Virus record (IMG/VR): IMGVR_UViG_3300024308_000016
Location: 186,001-250,000 of that record
Direction: 5' to 3' (one strand)
DNA: 64,000 bases
Shown here: positions 12,958 to 57,658 of the stretch, piece by piece
How positions within the stretch are numbered: the first letter of the stretch is position 1
Layout of the letters: each line of letters begins with the position of its first letter
Translations under genes and position numbers: made by a program
The notes under the pieces: model-generated
The model's input: the letters and a program-made list of their open reading frames with translations, nothing else
Database searches by the model: none
Told to the model about the DNA's origin: nothing

Positions 12958-15144
12958 GTGGCTACTCGTAATACGAATAGCGCCATAGAGGCCTATTTGA
13001 GTGACACAGTCTCTTTGGTGCGATCTCTCGTTGTGAAGTCCGAGATCACAGCCAAAAAGATCAATCAAGCTCTCGTCAAGCAATATGGCGAAGCCGCCGT
13101 GCTCCAGGACTTTCCTGAGACCTGGAAGTACTATATGAACCTGGCCGGTGAGTACCATAAAACCGACCAGATGATGAAAGTCATATCATTGGACACCCAC
13201 GAGTGGATCGATTTCACCGTGGAAAACATGAAGTTGCATATCGCAACTGCCAAGGCTTATCAGCACGGAACACGCTACTACTACAGCCTGGCTCGGAAAT
13301 ACCCGAGCCAGGTGCCATTGATTTTGGCCATCACTAACCCCGTCAACAAGCAGCGCGCCATCGAGGCGCCGGATGTAACCATCTTGGCTTGGCGGCGTGA
13401 CTTGGTGGAGACTCAAGAAGACAACCTCATCTTGGAAATCCAGACCTATATCCGCAACTATCTGTCGCGTAATACGGTCATTGGGTTTAACAACATCTAC
13501 GACTACTACCCGGTTCTTACACTGGCTAACTTGTGGATGAGCCTACCCAGCAAGATCATGAACATCCGGCTGAGGAACTGCAAGACGGAGAAGACCCACT
13601 CCTTCCATATGACGCAGTACCTGGCCAGTCACGGGCGCCTGGATCGTTTCATCCCGTACTTGACGCTCGAACAGGTCATGTACCTGTACCACAACATCGA
13701 CCGCCTCAACAAGCACGCCGGGAAAACCGAGATCTTCAAGGAGCTGATCCACTGGATCCTTGTGCTGCGCCGGGTCCCTCTCAGCGAGTACACGATCCGC
13801 CAGTTGCAAGAGTTTGGCTCTGACATGCTGCCCACTTTGCGAGCCAAGCGAACACCACTGTCGACGCTGGACAATACGGCAGAAGCCGCATATGTGGACA
13901 TGGACATCTTCTTTAAGAAGGAAGCAGGCACCCAAAAGGGAAACCCCCGCTACTTCGAAGTGGCCCTTCCCCGTATCGAGCACTCTTTGAAAACGTTCAA
14001 CGGATCCACCATCCTTACCAAGGACCTGGAGTCAGCCATGGTGGACTACACCAACGCTGTGCCTGACCCTCTTCCAGATGTGATGATGCGCCAGTGGGCG
14101 TACATGGCCACCAACAACCTGTACAACGTGGTCGTGTCCTTCTCGCATCCAGGAAGTGGAGAGAGCTTTAGCCTCATGGCCAAGGACGCTCTGATCTACT
14201 ACAGCTACGTGTACCTGAATGCTCATGGCGTGACAGTGACGAAGATCCCGAACTTCTTCAACCTGAAGTTCCGTCTGAACCCGCTACCCAATAAGGACGA
14301 GCTATACCGCCTGGTGCCGGATAAGTTCCCGGAGCTGTATGACTGGATCGACAAGATCCTCATCCAGCAGCCTCGCCTGTATCCTTGCACATCTATCCAG
14401 ATGTTCAATGATCTCACCACCCAGATCTACAATCGAGCTCTGAGCTACTGGTTGGAAATGGGTGCGATGAATGACCCATTGAAGCGTGGTGTCGCTGGTT
14501 GCATCGTCAGCAAGCTCTATGGCGCGGAGATCATCGAGCTGGCGGAACCCGGGCAGACCATTCAGTCGTGGCTCACTGAAAACAATATGCCGGTGTATGA
14601 CTATACCCGCGAGGAAGCCAATACCATCCTCAAGCAAATCTACGAGAACGCCACAGGTATGGCGCTCGACGACACCAAGAGCTTGAAGGCGATCCAAAAG
14701 GCACTGCTGGAGCTGTTCGGTCAGCAGTCGTCCTACGCCATTCAGTTCATGCGTGAGATCAACGATTCCGACATCATCCCGCTGACGGGCGCTGCTATCC
14801 GGATCGGCGTCGACGGCGAGGAAACTCATGATGAAGTCCACATCCTGGCGCCTGTACGGATACTGGATGTCCAGCAAGAGAGTCATGACAATGTTTATGT
14901 ACCGATCGCTGATATCAAGGTCGAAGCTGACCTCGATCAAATGGCCCATGAGGTCCATCTGGAGGCGGAGGTGCATATCAATCTGGAAGGCCAGCAAGAG
15001 TACTACGTATCCTTGCCTGTGCCTGCTGTCCGCATCGAAGAGCCCGGTATGAGCCCAGACGCTCAGACCGATCGATTCTACCCGATGGACTTCTACAACA
15101 AACTGTCGCCCGCGCAGATCGCTGGTATCGCCAACAACTTGTAA
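12958..15144 (+). CDS. Virion structural protein (baseplate-wedge-like, phiKZ gp128-like)
   Basis: 728 aa; TWKYYMNLAGEYH and HSFH..QYLASH motifs; synteny with portal. Confidence 0.7.
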   Translation: MATRNTNSAIEAYLSDTVSLVRSLVVKSEITAKKINQALVKQYGEAAVLQDFPETWKYYMNLAGEYHKTDQMMKVISLDTHEWIDFTVENMKLHIATAKAYQHGTRYYYSLARKYPSQVPLILAITNPVNKQRAIEAPDVTILAWRRDLVETQEDNLILEIQTYIRNYLSRNTVIGFNNIYDYYPVLTLANLWMSLPSKIMNIRLRNCKTEKTHSFHMTQYLASHGRLDRFIPYLTLEQVMYLYHNIDRLNKHAGKTEIFKELIHWILVLRRVPLSEYTIRQLQEFGSDMLPTLRAKRTPLSTLDNTAEAAYVDMDIFFKKEAGTQKGNPRYFEVALPRIEHSLKTFNGSTILTKDLESAMVDYTNAVPDPLPDVMMRQWAYMATNNLYNVVVSFSHPGSGESFSLMAKDALIYYSYVYLNAHGVTVTKIPNFFNLKFRLNPLPNKDELYRLVPDKFPELYDWIDKILIQQPRLYPCTSIQMFNDLTTQIYNRALSYWLEMGAMNDPLKRGVAGCIVSKLYGAEIIELAEPGQTIQSWLTENNMPVYDYTREEANTILKQIYENATGMALDDTKSLKAIQKALLELFGQQSSYAIQFMREINDSDIIPLTGAAIRIGVDGEETHDEVHILAPVRILDVQQESHDNVYVPIADIKVEADLDQMAHEVHLEAEVHINLEGQQEYYVSLPVPAVRIEEPGMSPDAQTDRFYPMDFYNKLSPAQIAGIANNL

Positions 15145-43357: not shown

Positions 43358-46300
43358 TCAAAGCACTCGCCGGTTATCAAAGGATGAGGTCGACGCTTCC
43401 GCAAACTTCGGTGTCTTGTACACCGGAGCGACGGGTTGCGGGGCCTCGGGCTTGGCGCCTCCTTGTTCAACCATGACTTGTCCCAGTCCGGTCAGTGCCT
43501 GACTCATGCCCTGCAGTATCGGAACGATCTGCGTGACAAGCGTCTCACTGATGGTGGCTACGTACTTATTGGAGTCATTGCCGATTTGGACCAGCTCATC
43601 GATGCCTTGGCTATTTTGGCCCTTGGCGATGGCGGTCAGTGCGGGATCAGGTCTTGCCATGGAGGGGACAGTGATCCGACGCTCAGCTGCTGCCGAAGCT
43701 TTAGCTGGTGCGGCGCTCGCTGTACTCACCGTCCGCATAGCGGAGCTGGGTACATTGAACGACGCGGTCGTGGTAGCGGTAGGTGTCGATCGATCAGCGT
43801 CAGCCGCCACAGCCTTGCCGGTAGTGTTACCTACCTTGGGGCCTCCCATGCCCTTAGGGGCGTAGGGAATGTTGAACTGCTGTGCCTTGTTCTCGATCTT
43901 GTTTTCGATGCGGTCGTACATCTCCGAGGTGGTCAGAGGACGATTGTTCGCATAGAACAGTTTGGCGTTGATGGGGTTGGCCGCTGCCTTTTGGAAGAGG
44001 CTGGCTGCCGGTGTATCGGGAGAGGCACTGAAGAACTTCCTGGCTCCGCCCAGACCCAGGTAGTGGGCCATGTAGCCGTCAGTGAAGTCGGGGTTTGGAC
44101 GTACAGACTCCAAACCCTTCAGATTTTGCTTCAGATACTCCGCACCCATCAAGGTGTTGGCTCTTGGATCAGTGCGATCTTCGTTGCCCTTCAAGCCGTA
44201 CTTGGAGCCGGTCTTGCGCATGGTGTCGTTCCATGCAGCGGGGAAGAACTGGTTCAAGCCGACCGCATTGCCAGCTTTGGCAGCGGGGTTCATACTCGAC
44301 TCCATCGCGCTCATCAAGAGCATGTCGTTGGGATTGACGCCTGCTTCCTTGGCAGCGGAGGTGATGGTGCCTCGGATGCCTTGCTCTGCAGGTTTTCCAC
44401 CACCCACAGATTCGGAAGGACGGGTTTCTCCGTCTTCGGCAAGTTTGCCCTTGTCAGTGTCGATCTTAGCACTTGGCTTGTAGGCCACTTGCTGCGTGCC
44501 CGAGGAGAACTTGTCTGGAGCGCCAGTGGTGGCGATCGCAGCCGCTGTAGGCGCTTGAGCCTGAGCGGTCATGCTCTTTTCCTCGGTGACTCCGGTCTTG
44601 GCCTTGATGCCTTGGTCCGCCTGGCTTGCAGTCTCGCCTGGAACCTGGGGCATTTTCAGATCGTTGATCGGAGAAGCTCCCTTGACCGCTGGGTCAGTGA
44701 CAGTAGCACCGCCCTTGGCGTTGTACAGGTCACGAGCGAGCTTGGGGTTGCGGGTGCCGAGCTTGGAACCCTTGATAGAGCCTTGGCCTCCGCCTCCTCG
44801 TCCCAGCGACGACTGGATCGCAATGTCCGCATAACTCTTGTCGGTTTTGGCCAGTTTCTCCGAGCCTTGGTAGCCGGCTGCTTCGATGTGCCACGTCTCT
44901 CCGCCCACAGGGCGAGTGAAGCCGTACTTGCGAAGCAATCCCATCTGCTCGAGTTCTTCCAGTTGGACGCTGGAGACGTCAAGCGCCAGGCCATGCTCGT
45001 GCATGGAGTTGCCGGGCTTGGCTGCCTTGGCTGGGTTTTGTCGGTGAAGCGCTGCTTGTCTTTGATAGCTTCGGAAAGCCTCATTGACTTGCAAGCTTTT
45101 GCCAGTGGCCTCCCCATACTCCTGGGCCATAGACAAGAAGTGCTTGAGCAGGCGCGGTTGCATCCCTTCCAGGACGGCGTCCTTGCCCAACTTCACGTAC
45201 TTCATGCCGCCGGAGCCATCCGCCATTTGACCACCCGCCAGTGCAGGCACCTTGGTCATCCCGGTGGAGGAGTCCGAGCCATCGGCCTGGCCATTGGAGA
45301 TGATGGTGGAGTTTTGGGTCTTGGACTGGGGAGGATCCTCAGGAGTGGCCACATCGAAGGGCTTGGCACTCGGAGCTTTGTTGAGCTCTCCGACTTGCTT
45401 GGACTCCACCGCAGGGGTGTTGGGGATCGCCTCACTCTTGATCTGATCGCCAGCCGCCACGATGACTGCCTTGGCATTCTTCTTGTCAGCTCCCTTAGGA
45501 TCGATCTCCCCAGCTTTGATCGCCGCTTTGACGCTCTTTTGCTGCTCCAGTCCCAGCGTCTTGATCTTGGCGTTGACCAGATTGAACGCAGGCTGGACGT
45601 TCGTGTTCAGAGAGTTCAGTCCCTTGAACGGAGAAACCGTCACGTCGTAGGGGCCCGACTCGAACGCTGCCTTGGACAGGTATTCGAGCTTTTGTTCGGG
45701 CTTGAGCTTGTCGAGTTCATCGAGCTTGACCTTCATGTCCACCTGAGCCAAGATAGCCAGGTGGTGCAAGAATACGGGTTTGAATCGCTGGTCGATCCAC
45801 TCCGTCAGGTTCTGAACCATCTGCGACTCCTTGGGATCGATGGAGAAGATCTCCAAGATGTCCTTGGTGTCGATGGCACGCTCGTTGATGTAGGGCTGCT
45901 TGCCACGGTATCCGATACGGCCGTCCAGCAGGTACTTCTCCAGGCCCATGACCTGGCTGTTGTACATCTCGGTAGCGTCAGTGCCGTCCAGACCGTACTG
46001 GATCACGCGGATGCGTTGCCAATCGTCGAGTCGGTTGCGGGTGAGGTACTTGTACAGCTTGTAGCCGCCATAAGCGGTTCCAGCCACAGCAGCGGCGCCG
46101 AGCACGACCGGAGAAGTGAGAACAGCCGCCAGCGAAGTGGCTGCGGCTCCCAAAGCGCCGATGATAGCACCGCCGGAACCACCAGCTGCCAGACCTACGG
46201 TCATAGCTGCACGAGCTGCGAAGCCACCGAAGCGGGCAACAGAGGCTGCACCTGGCAGTCGGGCCAACAGACCACCACCTGCCTTAGCGGCACCCGCCAA

Positions 46301-49300
46301 AGGTGTGCCCACTGTCCGAAAAGCTGTCGGGATCTTGCTCAGACCGGAGCCGAGCAAGCTCGCGCCTCCCATCAAGCCGCGACCGAGCAGTCCAGCTCCG
46401 CCTTTGAGGCCGCGACCCAGCAAGGAACCCGCGCCCTTGAGCAGTCCGCCCTTTCCACCCAGACCAAGCAATCCTATCGCCCCACTCATGATAGAGCCAG
46501 CGGCTGATGCGATAGTACCCATCATGCCGGTAGCCATCTTAAAGATGGTACTGAGCATGTCTGAGCCTTCCATGTACTTGTTCTTCTCCAGCCCTGCTTC
46601 GGACTTTTGCTGGGCTTCGAGCTTGCGCTGCTCATTGGCTTGGCGCATGTCTTCGTTTTGTTGCATGCGGTCAGCAGCTCCGCCATCGCGCTGTCCATCA
46701 CCGTCTCGGTCGTTGAACTGGCCCGTAGCCTTGCGGTACGCCTTCATAGCGCGTTGCTTGGCTTTGTTGACCATGTTGCGCATGCCGGAGCCAGACTCTT
46801 GAGAAGTCTCCTCCTGAGCGGGGCCTTGCTGCTGATTGCCGGCTTGGTCCTTATTGCCGGAGAACATACCAGACAAGAAACCTGCACCCTTGGCCAAACT
46901 TCCACCCAGACCTCCGAGCAATCCTGCTCCACGACCGAGCAAGCCTCCCAGACGACCTCCGCGTTTAGCGCCCAGGCCTGCGACCCTGGAGCCAGCCTTA
47001 GAGGCCATAGAGCCGATACCGCCGATGGCGCCCGGAAGCATAGAGGCGACACCTCCGAGCAATCCACCCAAGTTGCCACCAGCGTACTTGTTCATGATAC
47101 GCTGGCCAGTCGGGATCTGGGGACCTAGATCCACGCCAGATGGGAACATGGGACCTACGAAGTCGTCCGTTCCAGGCTGAGGAGCCGAGCCAAACATCTT
47201 GGCCCAGTCTTTCATCTTCTTGATGGTGCTGGAGTTGGCAGCTCCCGTGGTCTTGTCCTTGAGGAAGTCCCCGATACGAGCGCCTTGACCCAAGATAGAG
47301 TCCACGATCTTGGAGTCTTTGCCCACCAAGCTGATGTCCCGGATCTGAGTGAGCAGCGAGCGGTTGGTCTTGTCGACCGAGTCGTCCGATACTTCCTCAG
47401 GTGTCGCCGCCTGCATGGGCTTGGCCCCTGTGCGGTTCAAGATAGAACGCACGCGTCGACCACCCTTGCCCATTGCCAGGAGATCCCGGATCTGTTCGAG
47501 CACTTCTGTGGGCTTTTGCCAGCAGGTGCAGTCTCCGCCGGCTTGGAGCTGGGGAAGAGCTTGCAGTGCCTTGGAGACAGACTCTCCGATAGATGCCGAC
47601 AGCTCTCCCATACGCTCCTTCGACGATGCCCACATTGCGGCCATCCCTTCAGCGGAGTTTTGCCACGCTTGTCCAGCCATGGCTTTACCGTCTTCGTACA
47701 TCTGGCCCGCGCCCTGCACTCCGTGCTGGTACATGCTCTTGGCTTTACCGCCGAAGGACTTGGCTCTATCGCGAGCGAAGTCATACGCCTTGGATGCGCC
47801 GCTCATGAGCATGCCTGCAGCTCCTCGGCCCCGAGTGAACGCCTCGCCGGCCTTCTTCTTGATCCAGTCCAGCGCTTGGCGGGTCAAGGTACGCACAGGC
47901 TTGCCGTCTGCAGTAAACAGGCCGTCGACCATGTCGTCGATCGTCAGAACCACCTTGCCGTGGTGATCGATCACGTTGCCGGAGATGCGCGACAGGTCCT
48001 CCAAGTTCTTGATGGGCTTTCCGGTGCTCTCGTCCTTGTAAGCACCGAGCTCCATGAGCTTGGCGCGCAACACCGGTGCGGGATTGCCCGGCATGTACAC
48101 GTCCTGGGGACCGTTGACCAAGTTGATAGCCATGCCCTTGGCCTTATCGAGCATCATCCGTGCGGTCTTGACGGTGGCGGGCACCTTTTGGAACAACACG
48201 TCAGAACCAAAATCCACAGCTCTGCGAGTAGCGTTGACCGCTGCCTCGTAGACGCTGGACATCAGATTCTTGGCAGGCTCCTTAGCTGCTCCAGCAGCCG
48301 ACTTGCCCATATCCCACCCAGGCATGATCACCTTGTCCTTGAGCCAAGATGCCGTATCGATGGTGGTGCCTGTGAGTTTGGCAGCACCAGCAGCGGCTGC
48401 GTTGACCACACCAGCGATCAGGTTACCCATCAGGCCTTGGCCCTTCAGACCAAACCCGCGGGAAGCCATAGAACCGCCTTCTTGACCGCCCTCGCCCCCA
48501 AAGCCCATGAAACCACCGCCCTTGGCTTGTTGGGCGGAGATCTTCTTGACTTGCTCATCGATACTCTTGAGGTATTGAACGCCTTCTGAACCCACACCAC
48601 TGTCGAACTTCTCACCCAGCGCCTTGATGGCGGCGAGCATGTGACCTTGGGCCGAGATCGGATCGATGGAGGTGCCCCCTGGTGCTGTCTCCTCTCCCAG
48701 ATTTCGGTTCACGTCCTGAGCCATAGGACCGAAGTGCGTGGACTTGCCCAATCCCGCAGCTGCTTTGTAGTTCCAGCTGTAGTTGTCAGTGTTCATGATC
48801 CCCTTCAGGCTAGCTGTGGGGTTCTTGGGTGCGTAGGAGCGGATGTTCTCCTTTTGGGTCTGGTCAGACGTCATCCGGCCGCCTTGGTCGATGAGCTTGT
48901 AGTACTCATCTTCCACGATCTCGTAGTTGCCGTCCTTGTCACGCTTCAAGAAGCCCGCTTCCACCAGTCCTTCAGCATTGCCGTCAGCGATGGCTTGCTG
49001 GATAACGCCTCGGTGGTCCTTCACAGAGCTTCTGAGCTCCGAAGACCGGGACGTGAGCGAATACTTGCGGGTCAGCGCCTCCAGGGAGTCGCCGCTGTAG
49101 TTGGTCTGCAAGATCTTCCTGACCGTTTCCTGGGCTGAAGGGCTCAGGTTGCGGAACTCCACGGTGTCCATCATCCGGTCACCGTCATAGTCGAAGTTGC
49201 GCCTGCGGCTCAACTTGCCCAGATAGTCCTTTACTTCGTCTCGGTCCGCGTCTGGAACAGTGGCACCCTTGGTGAAGTCGTCGTAGGTCTCATTCAGGCG

Positions 49301-50869
49301 ATCCTTGTAACTGGACTCAGATGCTGCCTTCTTGATACCCATCAAGATGTCCGAGGACAGCTCGCGTTGGGTCTTGAACTTGCCGGTGTTGGGATCGTAC
49401 ACAGTCAGTGCCGTGGAGGTGTCTCCAGTGCGCAGCACGGTGATCTCTCGCAAGATGCGGGCCAAGTAGCCTGGGATCACATCGACCTGCGCGCGAGCCA
49501 CTCTCTTGGCGGTGTACAGGGCATCTTCCCCTTCTCCCCCGATGCCAGAGTTCTTGATAGTCATATCCGGCGTTTGATCACCGAAGATATCCATCAGGCC
49601 TTCGAGCATCTCTCGGATAAGACCAGAGGGACCTCCCGCGTAGCCGAAGTCCTGGAACTTGTCAGAGCGTTTGATCCGATCGATCAGACCGCCGGGGTTG
49701 TGCCCATAGCGGCCAGCCAGCATGGAGGCGCGCATGATGTTGGGGTTCTTCTCGGCAAGGGCTTTCAAGCGCTTGGAGACGTTCTTGCTCACCCACTCAC
49801 CAGCGGCAGCCCCCACGCCAGAGCCCACTGTGCGCCACCCCGAGTGCTTTTCCCCGGTGATCTCCGCCATGTCCCGGGCCATTTCGTTTTCGGAGATGAT
49901 GTTCTCCAGCATGTCATCGACCAAGGAGATGTTGTCCTTGAAGTCGTCCATCTGCTCTTTGATCTTGGCTCGGATCTTCTTGCTGGCGTTGGCGATTCGG
50001 TCGGTGGTACCAAACAGGCTGTCCTGGATCGCGCCGAACGCCTTGTTCTTGGCGATGTTGGAGAAACGCTCGGTTTCCTTGATCTTGGCAGCATCCGGCA
50101 GTCCGGTATTCTTCAAGATCCCAGCACCCGTGGTCTCAGCGACCTTGCGGTACTCGTTGAAGCTCTTGACCAGCGAGGCCATAGCGAAGTAGCTCCGGTA
50201 CTGCAGCTCAAGCGACTTCTTTTGGAAGTTCATGTTGAACGTCTGCTGGTAATCCCGGATGCTGTTGACACCGACGGCGATCTGCTGCTGGACCTTAAAC
50301 GAAGTGTTGAAGCGCTTGGTGTCGATCTTGTCGCTCAAGATCTTGCGGGCCTCATCCTCGACGCGATCTTCCTCGGTCTGAGCCATCATGCGCCCAAACG
50401 TCTCACCCAGCATACGCTCCACGCCCTGGTCCACCGCATCGGTGTTGTCCCAGTCGGTCTTGCGCGAGCCGCTCAGGGAGTCCGCCAGTGCCTTGGTCGT
50501 TTGCTTCAGACGCGTGGCCGAATCAGGTACGAGCTTGTCGATCTTTCTCATGATGGAAGCCAGCTGAGGCTTGACTTCCGAGATAGATTGATCGTATAGA
50601 CGCGAGGCATCTGACGTGATCTGATCCGTCGCCTCCCATGCTTTGCCGATGCCCTCGGGCAATGCGTCACGCGCTATCTGCGTATAGGTGGAGGGATCAG
50701 TGAACTTGTTACGCATGCTGGTCTTGACGCCTTCGAGGACGTGGTCGACTGGCTTGCGGTCGCGCTTGGGGCGCTCATCAGGGAAGTCTCCCCCGGAATA
50801 ATCAAAGTCAAGATCCCGATCAAATTCGAAATCCCCGTAATCATTACGGTTATCATCACGAGTCGCCAT
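43358..50869 (-). CDS. Tape-measure / structural peptidoglycan hydrolase (phiKZ gp181-like) with S74-like, M15-peptidase and SLT domains
   Basis: About 2,503 aa; long Gly/Ala helical repeats; SLT motifs AMESSMNP, GLNQF, YMAHYLG; M15 motifs FRS..RQ, SMHEHGLALD, ETWHIE. Confidence 0.85.
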   Translation of the reverse strand: MATRDDNRNDYGDFEFDRDLDFDYSGGDFPDERPKRDRKPVDHVLEGVKTSMRNKFTDPSTYTQIARDALPEGIGKAWEATDQITSDASRLYDQSISEVKPQLASIMRKIDKLVPDSATRLKQTTKALADSLSGSRKTDWDNTDAVDQGVERMLGETFGRMMAQTEEDRVEDEARKILSDKIDTKRFNTSFKVQQQIAVGVNSIRDYQQTFNMNFQKKSLELQYRSYFAMASLVKSFNEYRKVAETTGAGILKNTGLPDAAKIKETERFSNIAKNKAFGAIQDSLFGTTDRIANASKKIRAKIKEQMDDFKDNISLVDDMLENIISENEMARDMAEITGEKHSGWRTVGSGVGAAAGEWVSKNVSKRLKALAEKNPNIMRASMLAGRYGHNPGGLIDRIKRSDKFQDFGYAGGPSGLIREMLEGLMDIFGDQTPDMTIKNSGIGGEGEDALYTAKRVARAQVDVIPGYLARILREITVLRTGDTSTALTVYDPNTGKFKTQRELSSDILMGIKKAASESSYKDRLNETYDDFTKGATVPDADRDEVKDYLGKLSRRRNFDYDGDRMMDTVEFRNLSPSAQETVRKILQTNYSGDSLEALTRKYSLTSRSSELRSSVKDHRGVIQQAIADGNAEGLVEAGFLKRDKDGNYEIVEDEYYKLIDQGGRMTSDQTQKENIRSYAPKNPTASLKGIMNTDNYSWNYKAAAGLGKSTHFGPMAQDVNRNLGEETAPGGTSIDPISAQGHMLAAIKALGEKFDSGVGSEGVQYLKSIDEQVKKISAQQAKGGGFMGFGGEGGQEGGSMASRGFGLKGQGLMGNLIAGVVNAAAAGAAKLTGTTIDTASWLKDKVIMPGWDMGKSAAGAAKEPAKNLMSSVYEAAVNATRRAVDFGSDVLFQKVPATVKTARMMLDKAKGMAINLVNGPQDVYMPGNPAPVLRAKLMELGAYKDESTGKPIKNLEDLSRISGNVIDHHGKVVLTIDDMVDGLFTADGKPVRTLTRQALDWIKKKAGEAFTRGRGAAGMLMSGASKAYDFARDRAKSFGGKAKSMYQHGVQGAGQMYEDGKAMAGQAWQNSAEGMAAMWASSKERMGELSASIGESVSKALQALPQLQAGGDCTCWQKPTEVLEQIRDLLAMGKGGRRVRSILNRTGAKPMQAATPEEVSDDSVDKTNRSLLTQIRDISLVGKDSKIVDSILGQGARIGDFLKDKTTGAANSSTIKKMKDWAKMFGSAPQPGTDDFVGPMFPSGVDLGPQIPTGQRIMNKYAGGNLGGLLGGVASMLPGAIGGIGSMASKAGSRVAGLGAKRGGRLGGLLGRGAGLLGGLGGSLAKGAGFLSGMFSGNKDQAGNQQQGPAQEETSQESGSGMRNMVNKAKQRAMKAYRKATGQFNDRDGDGQRDGGAADRMQQNEDMRQANEQRKLEAQQKSEAGLEKNKYMEGSDMLSTIFKMATGMMGTIASAAGSIMSGAIGLLGLGGKGGLLKGAGSLLGRGLKGGAGLLGRGLMGGASLLGSGLSKIPTAFRTVGTPLAGAAKAGGGLLARLPGAASVARFGGFAARAAMTVGLAAGGSGGAIIGALGAAATSLAAVLTSPVVLGAAAVAGTAYGGYKLYKYLTRNRLDDWQRIRVIQYGLDGTDATEMYNSQVMGLEKYLLDGRIGYRGKQPYINERAIDTKDILEIFSIDPKESQMVQNLTEWIDQRFKPVFLHHLAILAQVDMKVKLDELDKLKPEQKLEYLSKAAFESGPYDVTVSPFKGLNSLNTNVQPAFNLVNAKIKTLGLEQQKSVKAAIKAGEIDPKGADKKNAKAVIVAAGDQIKSEAIPNTPAVESKQVGELNKAPSAKPFDVATPEDPPQSKTQNSTIISNGQADGSDSSTGMTKVPALAGGQMADGSGGMKYVKLGKDAVLEGMQPRLLKHFLSMAQEYGEATGKSLQVNEAFRSYQRQAALHRQNPAKAAKPGNSMHEHGLALDVSSVQLEELEQMGLLRKYGFTRPVGGETWHIEAAGYQGSEKLAKTDKSYADIAIQSSLGRGGGGQGSIKGSKLGTRNPKLARDLYNAKGGATVTDPAVKGASPINDLKMPQVPGETASQADQGIKAKTGVTEEKSMTAQAQAPTAAAIATTGAPDKFSSGTQQVAYKPSAKIDTDKGKLAEDGETRPSESVGGGKPAEQGIRGTITSAAKEAGVNPNDMLLMSAMESSMNPAAKAGNAVGLNQFFPAAWNDTMRKTGSKYGLKGNEDRTDPRANTLMGAEYLKQNLKGLESVRPNPDFTDGYMAHYLGLGGARKFFSASPDTPAASLFQKAAANPINAKLFYANNRPLTTSEMYDRIENKIENKAQQFNIPYAPKGMGGPKVGNTTGKAVAADADRSTPTATTTASFNVPSSAMRTVSTASAAPAKASAAAERRITVPSMARPDPALTAIAKGQNSQGIDELVQIGNDSNKYVATISETLVTQIVPILQGMSQALTGLGQVMVEQGGAKPEAPQPVAPVYKTPKFAEASTSSFDNRRVL

Positions 50870-50925
50870 AGTGCGAACCCTTTCTTTTATTATGCGGACC
50901 AAAAAACACTCAAAGGATCACAGCC

Positions 50926-52946
50926 ATGGCAAAAGACATTGACCCACTGAAGATAGAGCTGCTCATCCCCATGAAGACGGACTTGCAGGGTGTCAAGCCC
51001 GTGCTGGTCATGGACATCATGAGCGGCATGAGCAAGAACTTCCACCCTGAGGGCTTGTTCTCGGTGGAGATCTTCGGTAAAGTCGGAGAAACTACACGCT
51101 CGGCCACCTTCGCCTATATCAACTTGAATATCCCGGTGTTTCACCCGCTGCTGTTCAAGGTGATCTGCGATTTGAAGGAGCTGTACCAAGACATCATGGC
51201 CGGTAAGGCCTACGCAGTGTTCGATGAGGAAAAGAAGGACTTCTTCAAGAGCAACATTGCAGAAGGTGAAACCGGCTTTGCGTTCTTTTTGAAGCACTTC
51301 CCCAAGCTGCAGTTCGAAGAGCGTAAATCCATCACCCGGGCTGAGTACATCCGTCTGGTGGAGATGTACCGCGATAACCCCTTCATCGAGCAACTGGTCA
51401 TCTTGCCCGCCGGTGTGCGGGACTATGTGGTCGAAGAAGACGGCAAGCCTTCGGAAGACGAGATCAACGGTATGTACCGCTCCATCATGGCAGTGGCTGG
51501 CTCCATGGAGAACGTGCGCGCTGATGTGAACCCTGAGTTCATCGATGCGTCCAGATACAACCTGCAAGTCAAGCTGCTGGAGATCTACCGATACCTGATC
51601 GGCCTGATCTTGGGCAAGCACAAGATGGTCCAAGGCGCGTTCTTGAGCCGCAAGGTCTCCAACACCACGCGAAACGTGATCACCTCTTATATCCCGAACG
51701 TGCAAGAGTTCGGCGATGCCAGAAGCGTGCGTGCTGACCAGACGGTGATCGGCCTGTACCAGTTCACCCGAGACATCATGCCGCTGGCGGTGCATGCCAT
51801 TGTGGGCAAGTACCTGCCCAAGGTTTTCACGGGTCCCAATACCCCGGCTCAGCTGGTCAATCCAAAAACCCTGCACAAGGAAATGGTGACCGTCAACCCC
51901 CGGGAGTACAAGAAGTGGATGACCTACGAAGGCATCGAGAAGATGGCCGATCGATTCTCCGAAGAGTCGATGCGCCATTACCCGATCATGATCGAAGGCT
52001 ACTACATGGGCCTCGTGTACAAGGGCAATGACGGCACGTTCAAGTTCATCCAGGACATCGACGAGATCCCGGAGTCCCGCTCCAAAGATAGCGTCACTCC
52101 CATCACCATGGCGGAGTTCCTGTACATGTGCCTGTACGAGGAAGCCCTGGACGCCTGGGGTTATACCACTCGGTATCCTATCTCCGGCTATGGATCGACC
52201 TACCCGGGTGGGGTCGCTCTGAGAACTACCGTGCGATCGGAAGTGCGCACTGAGCTGGACGACTACTGGCAACCGATGCCTCACCAAGCGGTGAGCTTTC
52301 CGTTGCCGGGTGCGCAGTTCTTCAACTCCATGAGCCCAGCTGTCCGCCAAATTGGCCGGCTGGGGGCTGATATAAATACAGCTTTCACTCCCCTAAATCG
52401 CATATACAGCTATCCCAGACGAGGGATGTGAGTGACTAAGGGTGTAAGCGTATATGTCCTTCTGTCTAGTAATAGACAGTCGAAACTTCTTTAATTGCTG
52501 GAAACCCCTGAGAGCCGACCACACCACTGCGAGCGGTAACGTAAAGCGACGGTTTTAAGAAATGGGCGGATTGGGCAATCAGCAGCCAAGCCTCTTACTG
52601 AGAGGAAGGTCCAACGATCATCGGGTAGCTCCGAGTAAAGCCCCAAGCGGGGAAGAAATGGGAAGGGTCCTACCAGGTCATGCTGGGGATCTTGATATGA
52701 TCTGCTCCTCATGGAAACATGAGGCGGGTGTCTGTAGCACACCGGGACTGCGTAGCGAGCAGTCTGGACAATAGGTACGACGGGGACCAATGTTCTCACT
52801 ATTGTGTACTGACCCAGGAAGCCAAGCGAGAAGTCAAGCGTATGCTCGCTAGCAGGGATTATTACATGAACCTGGACGGCACCATGGCGTTCAGCCAAAA
52901 CAACGACTACATCTCTTTGGCGCTCAAGTATCTTACTGCGCGCTGA
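50926..52946 (+). CDS. Virion RNA polymerase beta'-like catalytic subunit (phiKZ gp180-like), spliced: join(50926..52371,52776..52946), 538 aa
   Basis: FHPEGLFSVEIFG, ILPAGVRD and TTRYPI motifs; exon joining restores the RLGAD-YDGD catalytic motif in frame. Confidence 0.9.
52372..52775 (+). ncRNA. Group I self-splicing intron, 404 nt, no homing endonuclease ORF
   Basis: 5' exon ends in U and intron ends in G; P AATTGCTGGAAA, Q AATCAGCAG, R TCCAACGATCA, S TGATATGATC; IGS CGTATATGTC pairs with both exons. Confidence 0.92.
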
Positions 52947-55900: not shown

Positions 55901-57658
55901 TCCGTCAAGCAAGCCGAGGACATCAATCCCATCCAGGCGCTGAAAGGCTCGGAAGCCATCACCTATGTGGGAGAAGGTGGCCGCTCCAAGGAGTCGATGA
56001 ACAAGGCATCCCGCGCTCTGCACACCTCCAACCTGGGCGTGGTGTCGGTCGATGCTTCCGTAGACTCTTCGGACGTGGGTATCAACATCTTTACCTCCGC
56101 CAACCCTGGCTTCAACTCCGTGCGTGGAATGAGCAAGAAGGGTCGTGAGATGGGACCCGCCAACCTCCTGGGCACCAGCGCGATGCTGGCACCCTTTGCG
56201 ATCAATGACGATCAAACAGGTCCGCACTACTGGAGACGGTATTGTGTATCTCCCTCAATTGCGAGAACCCCCTGAGAGCTCCACTACCACTGCTAGCCGC
56301 GAGGCGAAGCGAAGGTTCTAACAAAGCTGGAGATTGGGAAACCCGCAGCCAAGCCTCTCTAGTCAGAGGAAGGTTCAACGACTATGGCAGTTTGTCAGCC
56401 ATAGGGCCGAAGTGGCCCGAAACAGGGAGCATCTCTTAATCTAGAGATGAAGATATAGTCTCGACATCTGGGGAAAACCCAGAGCTGCTCTTATACTAGA
56501 GCGGGGCAAGCGTAACGAACTTGCCTGAAGGTATCGCCAAAACGTGTCGCATTTATCTCCATCCAGCAGGCCCACACCGTGGCCACCACTGGCTACCACG
56601 CACCCGTGGTGCGTACTGGCTACGAGTCCGTGATCGGACAGCGTACTGGTGAGATGTTCGCTTCGGCTGCTCGGATGGACGGCAAGGTGATCTCGGTATC
56701 GGACTCCGGCATCTTGGTGGAGTACGCAGACGGTGAACAAAAGGGCTACACCTTGGGCACGATGTACGGACGTGCGGAAGGCTCCACCTATCCACACAAC
56801 CTCATCACTGAGATGAAGCCCGGTCAGAAGTTCAAGAAAGGCGAGTACATCTCGTACAACACCAACTTCTTTGAACCCGACCCGATCTTGCCAGGCTCCG
56901 TGGTCTACAAGGGTTCCATGCTTACGCGTGTGGCTCTGATCGAATCCTCCAACACCCATGAGGACTCCTCGACTATCAGTGAAGAACTGTCCAAGTCGAT
57001 GACCACCACCACCGCCAAGGTCAAGAAGTACGCCGTGAACTTCCGGCAAAACCTGCTCAACATGGTCAAGATCGGCCAGCAGGTCAACCCTGAAGACATC
57101 ATCATGACCATCGAAGATGAGATCACTGCGATGGACGACAGCTTCGGAGATGCGTCGATGGAGATCCTGGCCGCCCGTGCCAAGAACTCTCCGACGTCCG
57201 GCTACCGTGGCCGAGTCTCTGACATCGATGTGATCTACCACGGCGACAAATCCGATATGTCCGCATCTTTGAAAGCCTTGGCTGATCGCTCCGATCGCCG
57301 AAGAGCCGACAAGGCCAAGGCCACGGGTCGACCTGCTGTGACCGGAGCTGTTGACTCCGACTACTCGCACGACGGTGCACCGCTGATGCTCAACAAAGCG
57401 ATCATCATCGTCTACATCACCGTCTCTGAAGGAGCGGGCGTTGGTGACAAGTTGGTATTCTCCAACCAGCTCAAGAGCGTGATCGGTGAGGTCATGCCCT
57501 ACAAGCTCACCACCAAGTCTGGCCTTCCCGTGCATGCCAAGTTCGGTGCCAAGAGCTTCGCTGCCCGTATCGTGAACTCTATGATCTCGATCGGATTGCG
57601 GGGCGCAGTCCTCGACCGGCTGACTGATGTCGCCGTCGAAGCTTACGAAGGAAAGTAA
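52964..57658 (+). CDS. Virion RNA polymerase beta-like subunit (phiKZ gp178-like), spliced: join(52964..56212,56537..57658), 1456 aa
   Basis: QRVRGYERF, TYVGEGGRS, SVDSSDVG and GVGDKLVFSNQLKSVI motifs; exon joining gives NDD-PKRVAFISIQ. Confidence 0.9.
56213..56536 (+). ncRNA. Group I self-splicing intron, 324 nt, no homing endonuclease ORF
   Basis: P1 GAU|C-AAACA-GGUC with U-G pair; P AATTGCGAGAA, Q AACCCGCAG, R GTTCAACGACTA, S AAGATATAGTCT; terminal G. Confidence 0.94.

What the first reader, a model, noticed from the sequence alone, without database searches (positions are those of the whole stretch)
52362..52458. Long structured insert in the P1 loop of intron 1 with a competing hairpin: possible splicing switch
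Seen: the guide sequence lies ~75 nt from the 5' splice site, versus 5 nt in intron 2. The insert holds TCACTC/GAGTGA and ATCCC/GGGAT stems and a repeated ATACAGCT. Exon GGGGCTG can pair with the proximal CAGCTTT, putting the splice site in a loop and competing with the weak true P1. The exon reading frame continues 19 codons to a stop (52429-52431) inside this insert. Known: translation of the upstream exon assists folding of the T4 td intron, and a riboswitch-controlled group I intron exists in C. difficile. Inference: splicing here may be controlled by ribosome passage, a protein or a ligand. Alternatively the insert is a decayed endonuclease remnant.
Basis: inference. Interest (0 to 1): 0.65.

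Follow-up and report, generated by a model that had tools for sequence, protein, structure and literature searches.

The report
Expanded P1 loop in phage intron
A self-splicing intron in a giant phage's RNA polymerase gene carries an extra 78-base hairpin in a loop where its relatives carry a homing-endonuclease gene; it looks like a harmless, splicing-compatible leftover, not a splicing switch.

Summary
The insert is real. Intron 1 (52372-52775) splits the catalytic GAD|YDGD motif of a jumbo-phage virion RNA polymerase beta' gene. Its guide strand (52453-52458) lies 81 nt from the 5' splice site. The gap is 5 nt in intron 2 and 8 nt to the guide G in three introns at the same site elsewhere.

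The splicing-switch reading is not supported:
- No relative shares the insert, and no known aptamer matches it.
- In folding models the insert forms a 25-bp interrupted rod stacked on P1. P1 is then in the minimum-energy structure (probability 0.43-0.48, against 0.02-0.08 for short-loop relatives).
- The native insert favours P1 more than 93% of shuffled inserts. Two other long-loop relatives behave the same way.
- The proposed competing hairpin is predicted only in nascent RNA.
- The 19-codon read-through is what chance gives.

In three same-site introns, including the window's closest relative, this P1 loop holds an I-HmuI-like HNH homing-endonuclease gene. The 78 nt is most likely what remains of that cargo loop, partly remodelled by a local duplication. 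Sequence proof of this descent is lacking (p about 0.05-0.2).

This is an ordinary feature of a known kind and of low interest.

The parts
50926..52371 (+). Exon 1 of the virion-RNAP beta' N-terminal subunit gene, ending ...RLGAD
   Evidence: ORF and translation. 46% identity to Burkholderia phage FLC9 and hits to 289 jumbo-phage beta' genes. Junction alignment.
52362..52386 (+). It is at most a transient co-transcriptional structure.
   Evidence: The GCUG/CAGC core has probability 0.2-1.0 (mostly above 0.7, depending on transcript ends) in transcripts ending before 52452. The full 7 bp has probability about 4e-7 when the guide strand is present.
52369..52374 (+). P1 5' strand GAU|AUA. The 5' splice site follows U52371.
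   Evidence: U-G wobble with G52456. GAU/GUC is invariant and the +1 pair covaries (A-U, U-A, C-G) in seven same-site introns.
52375..52452 (+). 78-nt insert in the P1 loop (L1). It is predicted to form a 25-bp interrupted rod of seven short helices stacked on P1.
   Evidence: Absent from L030b and L036b. Helix list. P(P1) 0.48 against a median of 0.015 for shuffled inserts.
52376..52386 (+). Direct repeat copy 1, ATACAGCTTTC
   Evidence: p=0.017 against dinucleotide shuffles.
52404..52414 (+). Direct repeat copy 2, ATACAGCTATC
52412..52427 (+). Apical hairpin AUCCC-AGACGA-GGGAU of the rod
   Evidence: Ensemble probability 0.54. Present in the minimum-energy structure.
52429..52431 (+). First in-frame stop (UGA) of the exon-1 frame, 19 codons into the intron and 22 nt before the guide strand
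   Evidence: The chance expectation is a mean run of 17 codons.
52453..52458 (+). P1 3' strand, the internal guide sequence UAUGUC
   Evidence: Aligns with the guide of intron 2 and of the same-site introns.
52462..52479 (+). P2 hairpin with a GUAA tetraloop
   Evidence: 7-bp inverted repeat. Compensatory changes in relatives keep a hairpin with a GNRA loop.
52436..52724 (+). Catalytic core matched by Rfam RF00028, P3-P9 with P7.1 and P7.2 hairpins
   Evidence: 58.3 bits against a gathering score of 50.
52725..52775 (+). 3' peripheral hairpins and the terminal G (52775). This is the signature domain of the lineage.
   Evidence: Conserved in PhiPA3, L014-16, L030, L036 and L050-55.
52776..52946 (+). 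Exon 2, YDGD... to the stop codon
56213..56536 (+). Intron 2, the paralogous comparison intron with a 5-nt P1 loop, in the beta gene after ...INDD

Best explanation
Intron 1 is an ordinary subgroup-IA group I intron. It belongs to a lineage that homes to the NAD|F/YDGD site of phage beta' genes.

In that lineage the P1 loop (L1) is the cargo loop. It is either tiny or holds an I-HmuI-like HNH homing-endonuclease gene. The window's copy has no endonuclease. Its 78-nt L1 is most likely the vestige of that cargo loop, partly rebuilt by a local duplication.

The insert folds on itself into an interrupted rod that starts 2 nt beyond P1. The 5' splice site and the guide strand therefore stay juxtaposed, and the weak 6-bp P1 is closed and stacked rather than outcompeted. 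The insert is tolerated, and selected only for being compatible with splicing. It is not a regulatory switch.

Shown: the splice junctions, the P1 assignment, the insertion, its absence in relatives, and endonuclease genes in L1 of relatives.

Inferred: descent from an endonuclease gene, the stabilising effect on P1, and the absence of regulation.
For: - Junctions.
- P1 covariation across seven same-site introns.
- Clean insertion relative to L030b and L036b.
- Distance from the 5' splice site to the guide G is 84 nt (window), 61 (L051), 8 (L030b, L036b, L055), 1039 (L052) and 1078 (L053).
- The ORFs in L1 of L052, L053 and L054 are HNH_3 plus NUMOD proteins, 30-38% identical to one another.
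- The window's core is closest to the endonuclease-bearing L053 (67% identity). Endonuclease-bearing and endonuclease-free members are interleaved in the same-site clade (support 85/92).
- P1 is in the minimum-energy structure with probability 0.48 (5' region) and 0.43 (whole intron), against 0.02-0.08 for short-loop relatives.
- The native loop beats 93% (window), 99% (L051) and 94% (PhiPA3) of shuffled loops for P1 formation.
- The internal repeat has p=0.017.
- Large inserts in L1 are tolerated or natural elsewhere: PMC2926621 and PMC4964425.
Against: - No significant sequence similarity links the 78 nt to any endonuclease gene or its flanks. The best cases are 15/20 matches and a gapped 25-column match to the 3' end of the L053 ORF, with p 0.05-0.2.
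- The window-L053 pairing in the tree is unsupported (45/8).
- The thermodynamic models ignore tertiary structure, kinetics and proteins.
- The window's own shuffle test gives p=0.07, which is not significant alone.
- Splicing was not observed.
Confidence: 0.6

Rival explanations
1. The L1 rod arose de novo by duplication or slippage, with no endonuclease history. It persists because it clamps an unusually weak, AU-rich P1.
For: - Significant internal direct repeat.
- Higher predicted P1 probability than in short-loop relatives and than 93% of shuffled inserts.
- No detectable endonuclease-derived sequence.
Against: - L1 is the endonuclease site in three same-site relatives, including the nearest one.
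- Short-loop relatives with equally weak P1 helices exist, so a clamp is not required.
Confidence: 0.25
2. The proximal hairpin (52362-86) or the internal mimic CAUAUAC (52401-07), which pairs with the guide strand, traps the pre-mRNA until a ribosome, protein or ligand resolves it.
For: - The proximal hairpin is predicted in nascent RNA.
- A 7-nt perfect complement to the guide strand exists inside the insert.
- P1 is weak.
- Translation-assisted splicing is known for T4 introns (PMC3073962).
Against: - Equilibrium probabilities of the competitors are 4e-7 and 2e-4.
- The insert favours P1.
- There is no conservation in any relative.
- There is no aptamer match.
- The stop position is at chance level, and intron 2 lets the frame run 20 codons into the catalytic core.
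- If this is a nucleus-forming chimallivirus, transcription is separated from ribosomes (PMC12908238). That was inferred here, not shown.
Confidence: 0.1
3. The splice site or guide strand is misassigned, or the intron is dead, so the insert has no RNA-level meaning.
For: - The Rfam score is only 8 bits above threshold, and the model misplaces P1.
- J8/7 begins UU where relatives have AA.
Against: - The junction restores the universal catalytic motif exactly.
- The GAU/GUC pairing is shared by all same-site introns, with covariation at +1.
- The P7 changes are compensatory and shared with L053.
- The gene is essential for a virion RNA polymerase.
Confidence: 0.03

Closest known systems
Same-site group I introns in phage beta' genes carrying an I-HmuI-like HNH endonuclease gene in the P1 loop (metagenomic loci L052, L053, L054 found here)
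   Same: They share the insertion site (NAD|F/YDGD), the GAU/GUC P1 pairing, a P2 hairpin capped by a four-base loop, a homologous core and the same 3' domain. Core identity to L053 is 67%.
   Different: The window has 78 nt and no ORF where they have about 1 kb encoding a 330-344 aa endonuclease. No significant residual similarity was found.
PhiPA3 gp210 intron in the virion-RNAP beta gene (Birkholz et al., Science 2024, PMC11620839) and the PhiPA3 gp065 intron
   Same: These are group I introns in jumbo-phage RNA polymerase genes at catalytic-site codons. The window's intron 2 occupies the same two-aspartate site as the gp210 intron. The gp065 intron shares intron 1's 3' domain and also has a long (118-nt) ORF-less P1 loop that favours P1.
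   Different: The gene or site differs from intron 1. The gp210 intron carries an active endonuclease. The inserts are not alignable.
Large P1-loop inserts in other group I introns: LAGLIDADG-motif coding sequence in the P1 loop of a fungal cox3 intron (PMC4964425), aptamers engineered into the Tetrahymena P1 loop (PMC2926621), and the I-PpoI gene in P1 of the Physarum PpLSU3 intron (my own recollection)
   Same: L1 points away from the core and accepts tens to hundreds of extra nucleotides.
   Different: Those cases are eukaryotic or organellar introns of other subgroups. Here the insert is short, non-coding and in a phage mRNA.
Translation-assisted splicing of T4 td, nrdB and sunY introns, and the 5'-exon hairpin that competes with P1 in the Tetrahymena intron (Woodson and Cech 1991, my own recollection)
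   Same: An exon or intron hairpin can in principle mask the 5' splice site. The upstream frame ends inside the intron before the core.
   Different: Nothing here shows dependence on translation. The competitor is predicted to be only transient. Same-site relatives L030b and L036b have the stop as the very first intron codon. The host phage may separate transcription from translation.
c-di-GMP-II riboswitch-controlled group I intron of Clostridioides difficile
   Same: A structured RNA lies next to the 5' splice site of a group I intron.
   Different: No aptamer is detectable, the insert is not conserved, and it lies inside the P1 loop rather than upstream.

Membership tests
Group I intron (Rfam RF00028) | Covariance-model score above the curated threshold | tested here: met
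   58.3 bits against 50 for 52436-52724.
Group I intron (Rfam RF00028) | The 5' exon ends in U, paired as a U-G wobble with an internal guide sequence (P1) | tested here: met
   U52371-G52456. GAU/GUC is invariant and the +1 pair covaries in seven same-site introns.
Group I intron (Rfam RF00028) | Terminal G at the 3' splice site, and excision restores the host reading frame | tested here: met
   G52775. GAD+YDGD aligns without a gap to ADFDGD of homologues, and an intron-less allele exists in L006.
Group I intron (Rfam RF00028) | Self-splicing activity | not testable with these tools
   No transcript data are available. This needs RT-PCR or in vitro splicing.
Subgroup IA (phage type) | Extra hairpins P7.1 and P7.2 between the P7 5' strand and the P3 3' strand | tested here: met
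   The 36-nt insertion at that place in the Rfam alignment holds two hairpins, UCGG..CCGA and GCCCC..GGGG (by inspection).
Mobile intron carrying a homing endonuclease | Endonuclease ORF inside the intron | tested here: not met
   No ORF of the plus strand lies wholly within the intron except one of 70 aa (52562-52774), which was not examined. No similarity anywhere in the window to the L1 endonucleases of relatives. The relatives L052, L053 and L054 do meet this feature.
Riboswitch- or ligand-controlled group I intron | Recognisable, conserved aptamer next to the splice-site helix | tested here: not met
   The only Rfam match at E<=10 is a spurious snoRNA hit at 13.8 bits. The insert is absent from all relatives.
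Translation-dependent phage intron (T4 td type) | Splicing efficiency depends on ribosomes translating the upstream exon up to an early in-frame stop | not testable with these tools
   The stop lies 19 codons in and is consistent with chance. The dependence itself needs an experiment.

The most novel reading that the evidence does not exclude
After losing its endonuclease gene, the P1 loop was re-used as a kinetic gate. The nascent proximal hairpin and the internal guide-strand mimic (CAUAUAC) hold the pre-mRNA of the virion RNA polymerase subunit unspliced until a phage factor or export to ribosomes resolves them. This would time production of a late, packaged enzyme.
Probability: 0.07. Interest if true: 0.6.

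Novelty: new member of a known kind. Interest (0 to 1): 0.22.

Why it matters
As a regulatory switch this would have been notable, but the evidence points the other way.

Two modest points remain:
- It documents a group I intron lineage that targets the catalytic DFDGD codons of phage RNA polymerase beta' genes and keeps its homing-endonuclease gene inside the P1 loop.
- In this small sample, long ORF-less P1 loops (the window, L051, PhiPA3) are non-randomly folded so that P1 can still close. This fits selection for splicing competence after cargo loss.

This helps with annotating split polymerase genes in jumbo phages. It also adds natural examples of how much the substrate helix loop can carry.

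Tried and rejected
- I looked for relatives of the insert. The phage database search, blastn and tblastx against about 350 kb of fetched loci and the rest of the window, and collection scans recovered only the window's own contig.
- The closest phage relative (65% amino-acid identity, L006) is intron-less.
- All 60 listed jumbo-phage matches are single pieces at this site, so they are intron-less there (190 of 199 matching records cover at least 80% of the query in one place).
- ATACAGCT as a promoter-like genome motif: the other five copies lie in unrelated coding context.
- Alignment of L1 sequences and flanks between the window, L051, L052 and L053 gave nothing convincing.
- Endonuclease proteins against the window gave nothing.
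- PhiPA3 relatives that share its L1 insert: none found.
- Chimallin in the 64-kb window: not found, so nucleus formation by this phage remains an inference from its polymerase genes.
- A literature check for an AR9 polymerase intron gave no mention.

Full report
**Context.** The window is part of a 272-kb viral contig. The ORF at 50926-52431 encodes the N-terminal beta' subunit of a phiKZ-type multisubunit RNA polymerase. It is 46% identical to Burkholderia phage FLC9 and matches 289 jumbo-phage records, some annotated as virion RNAP. Rfam finds two group I introns, at 52436-52724 (58.3 bits) and 56203-56484 (65.2 bits).

**Splice junctions.** Exon 1 ends ...RLGAD, and the frame after G52775 reads YDGD.... 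Together they align without a gap to LGADFDGD of FLC9 and RP12. A 65%-identical relative, L006, has the uninterrupted allele. Intron 1 is therefore 52372-52775 (404 nt). It sits inside the catalytic metal-binding motif.

**P1 and the insert.**
- The only guide strand that gives a U-G wobble at U52371 is UAUGUC (52453-58), pairing with GAU|AUA (52369-74).
- This strand aligns with the guide of the paralogous intron 2, which is GAU|C/GGUC with a 5-nt loop.
- Scans with the conserved 3' domain and with the 3' junction recovered seven further introns at the same NAD|F/YDGD site.
- For the seven introns whose 5' splice site lies within the sequence held, GAU/GUC is invariant and the +1 pair covaries: A-U, U-A, C-G. 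The P1 assignment is therefore sound.
- The 78 nt at 52375-52452 lie in the P1 loop. An alignment with L030b and L036b shows them as one clean insertion.

- The named stems and the repeat exist. The repeat is 11 nt with one mismatch and is unlikely by chance (p=0.017), but it is not a genome-wide motif.
- The region is not unusually stable (z -1.4 and -1.3).
- The read-through of 19 codons is as expected (P=0.32).
- Intron 2 lets the frame run 20 codons into the catalytic core. Same-site relatives L030b and L036b have TAA as the first intron codon. There is thus no consistent pattern in where the stop falls.

**Does the insert compete with P1?**
- With 40 nt of exon context, the minimum-energy structure contains P1 exactly. 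It is followed by a 25-bp interrupted rod made of the insert.
- P(P1) is 0.48 for the 5' region and 0.43 for the whole intron. It is 0.02-0.08 for intron 2 and L030b.
- Only 7% of dinucleotide-shuffled inserts do as well, and their median is 0.015.
- The same test on the two other long ORF-less P1 loops gives 0.7% (L051, 61 nt) and 6% (PhiPA3 gp065 intron, 118 nt). By my own Fisher combination of the three values, made outside any tool call, p is about 0.002.
The internal mimic CAUAUAC paired with the guide strand has probability 2e-4. UCACUC/GAGUGA has probability 0.013.
- The core of the proximal hairpin is predicted only while the 3' arm of the rod is still untranscribed.
- These are secondary-structure models without tertiary contacts or kinetics.

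**Comparative evidence on origin.**
- In L052 a 330-aa ORF lies between the 5' splice site and the guide strand. In L053 a 344-aa ORF does so and runs through the guide strand into P2. In L054 the same arrangement is cut by the contig end.
- These ORFs are HNH_3 plus NUMOD (I-HmuI-like) proteins, 30-38% identical to one another.
- L055, L030b and L036b have loops of a few nucleotides. L051 has 61 nt.
- The window's core is closest to L053 (67%). In a tree, six of the eight same-site introns (L036b was left out as 99% identical to L030b) form a moderately supported clade (85/92) in which endonuclease-bearing and endonuclease-free members are interleaved. L052 falls outside it with PhiPA3 and intron 2, at low resolution.
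- The simplest reading is repeated loss of the endonuclease from the P1 loop. This fits the known gain-and-loss cycle of homing-endonuclease genes (my own knowledge), with the window's insert as a remnant.
- Direct sequence evidence is weak. The best similarities to the 3' end of the L053 ORF have p 0.05-0.2. Nothing else matches.

**Regulation.**
- No aptamer family matches the insert, and no relative conserves it.
- Translation-assisted splicing and early in-frame stops are known for phage introns (PMC3073962).
- If this phage is nucleus-forming like its polymerase relatives, transcription is separated from ribosomes (PMC12908238). I could not verify this, because chimallin is not in the window.

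**Verdict.** The switch interpretation is unsupported. The insert is best read as a splicing-compatible vestige or expansion of the endonuclease cargo loop of an otherwise ordinary phage group I intron.

Noticed in passing
window 56213-56536: Intron 2 interrupts the beta subunit gene right after ...AINDD. This is the two-aspartate site (E. coli HDD|ANR) where the PhiPA3 gp210 endonuclease intron sits and which that enzyme cuts in phiKZ gp178 (PMC11620839). The window's copy has no endonuclease ORF.
   Followed up: partly
L052 533-1948; L053 (minus strand) and L054: A lineage of group I introns at the DFDGD codons of phage beta' genes keeps an I-HmuI-like HNH endonuclease gene inside the P1 loop. 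In L053 the ORF runs through the guide sequence and ends in P2.
   Followed up: partly
L036 (minus strand) around 13778-13789; L030 2141-2623; L055: Tandem introns in one beta' gene. In L036 two introns appear to be separated by a 12-nt micro-exon (TTCAATGCTGAT, encoding FNAD). In L030 two introns lie about 130 nt apart; in L055 a second intron core lies upstream, but its end was not mapped.
   Followed up: no
L009 2247-2700 (PhiPA3 gp065, annotated as a polymerase beta 'fragment'): A group I intron splits HGG|KGVV of the non-virion polymerase beta gene. It shares intron 1's 3' domain and has an ORF-less 118-nt P1 loop. The GenBank record annotates the gene only as a misc_feature.
   Followed up: partly
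window 52687-52703 and 52620-52626: J8/7 begins UU where all relatives have AA. P7 is GAUCA/UGAUC instead of the usual GACUA/UAGUC, a compensatory change shared only with L053.
   Followed up: no
window 43358-50902 (minus strand): A 2514-aa ORF lies head-to-head with the polymerase genes. FLC9 and RP12 also have very large hypothetical ORFs at this position.
   Followed up: no
L014-L016, L028, L029: Relatives with the same 3' domain sit in a different gene, apparently structural (exon ...GKGQVMSEELKQQL). They carry an ORF with an HNH-type motif in the P6 loop rather than in P1.
   Followed up: no
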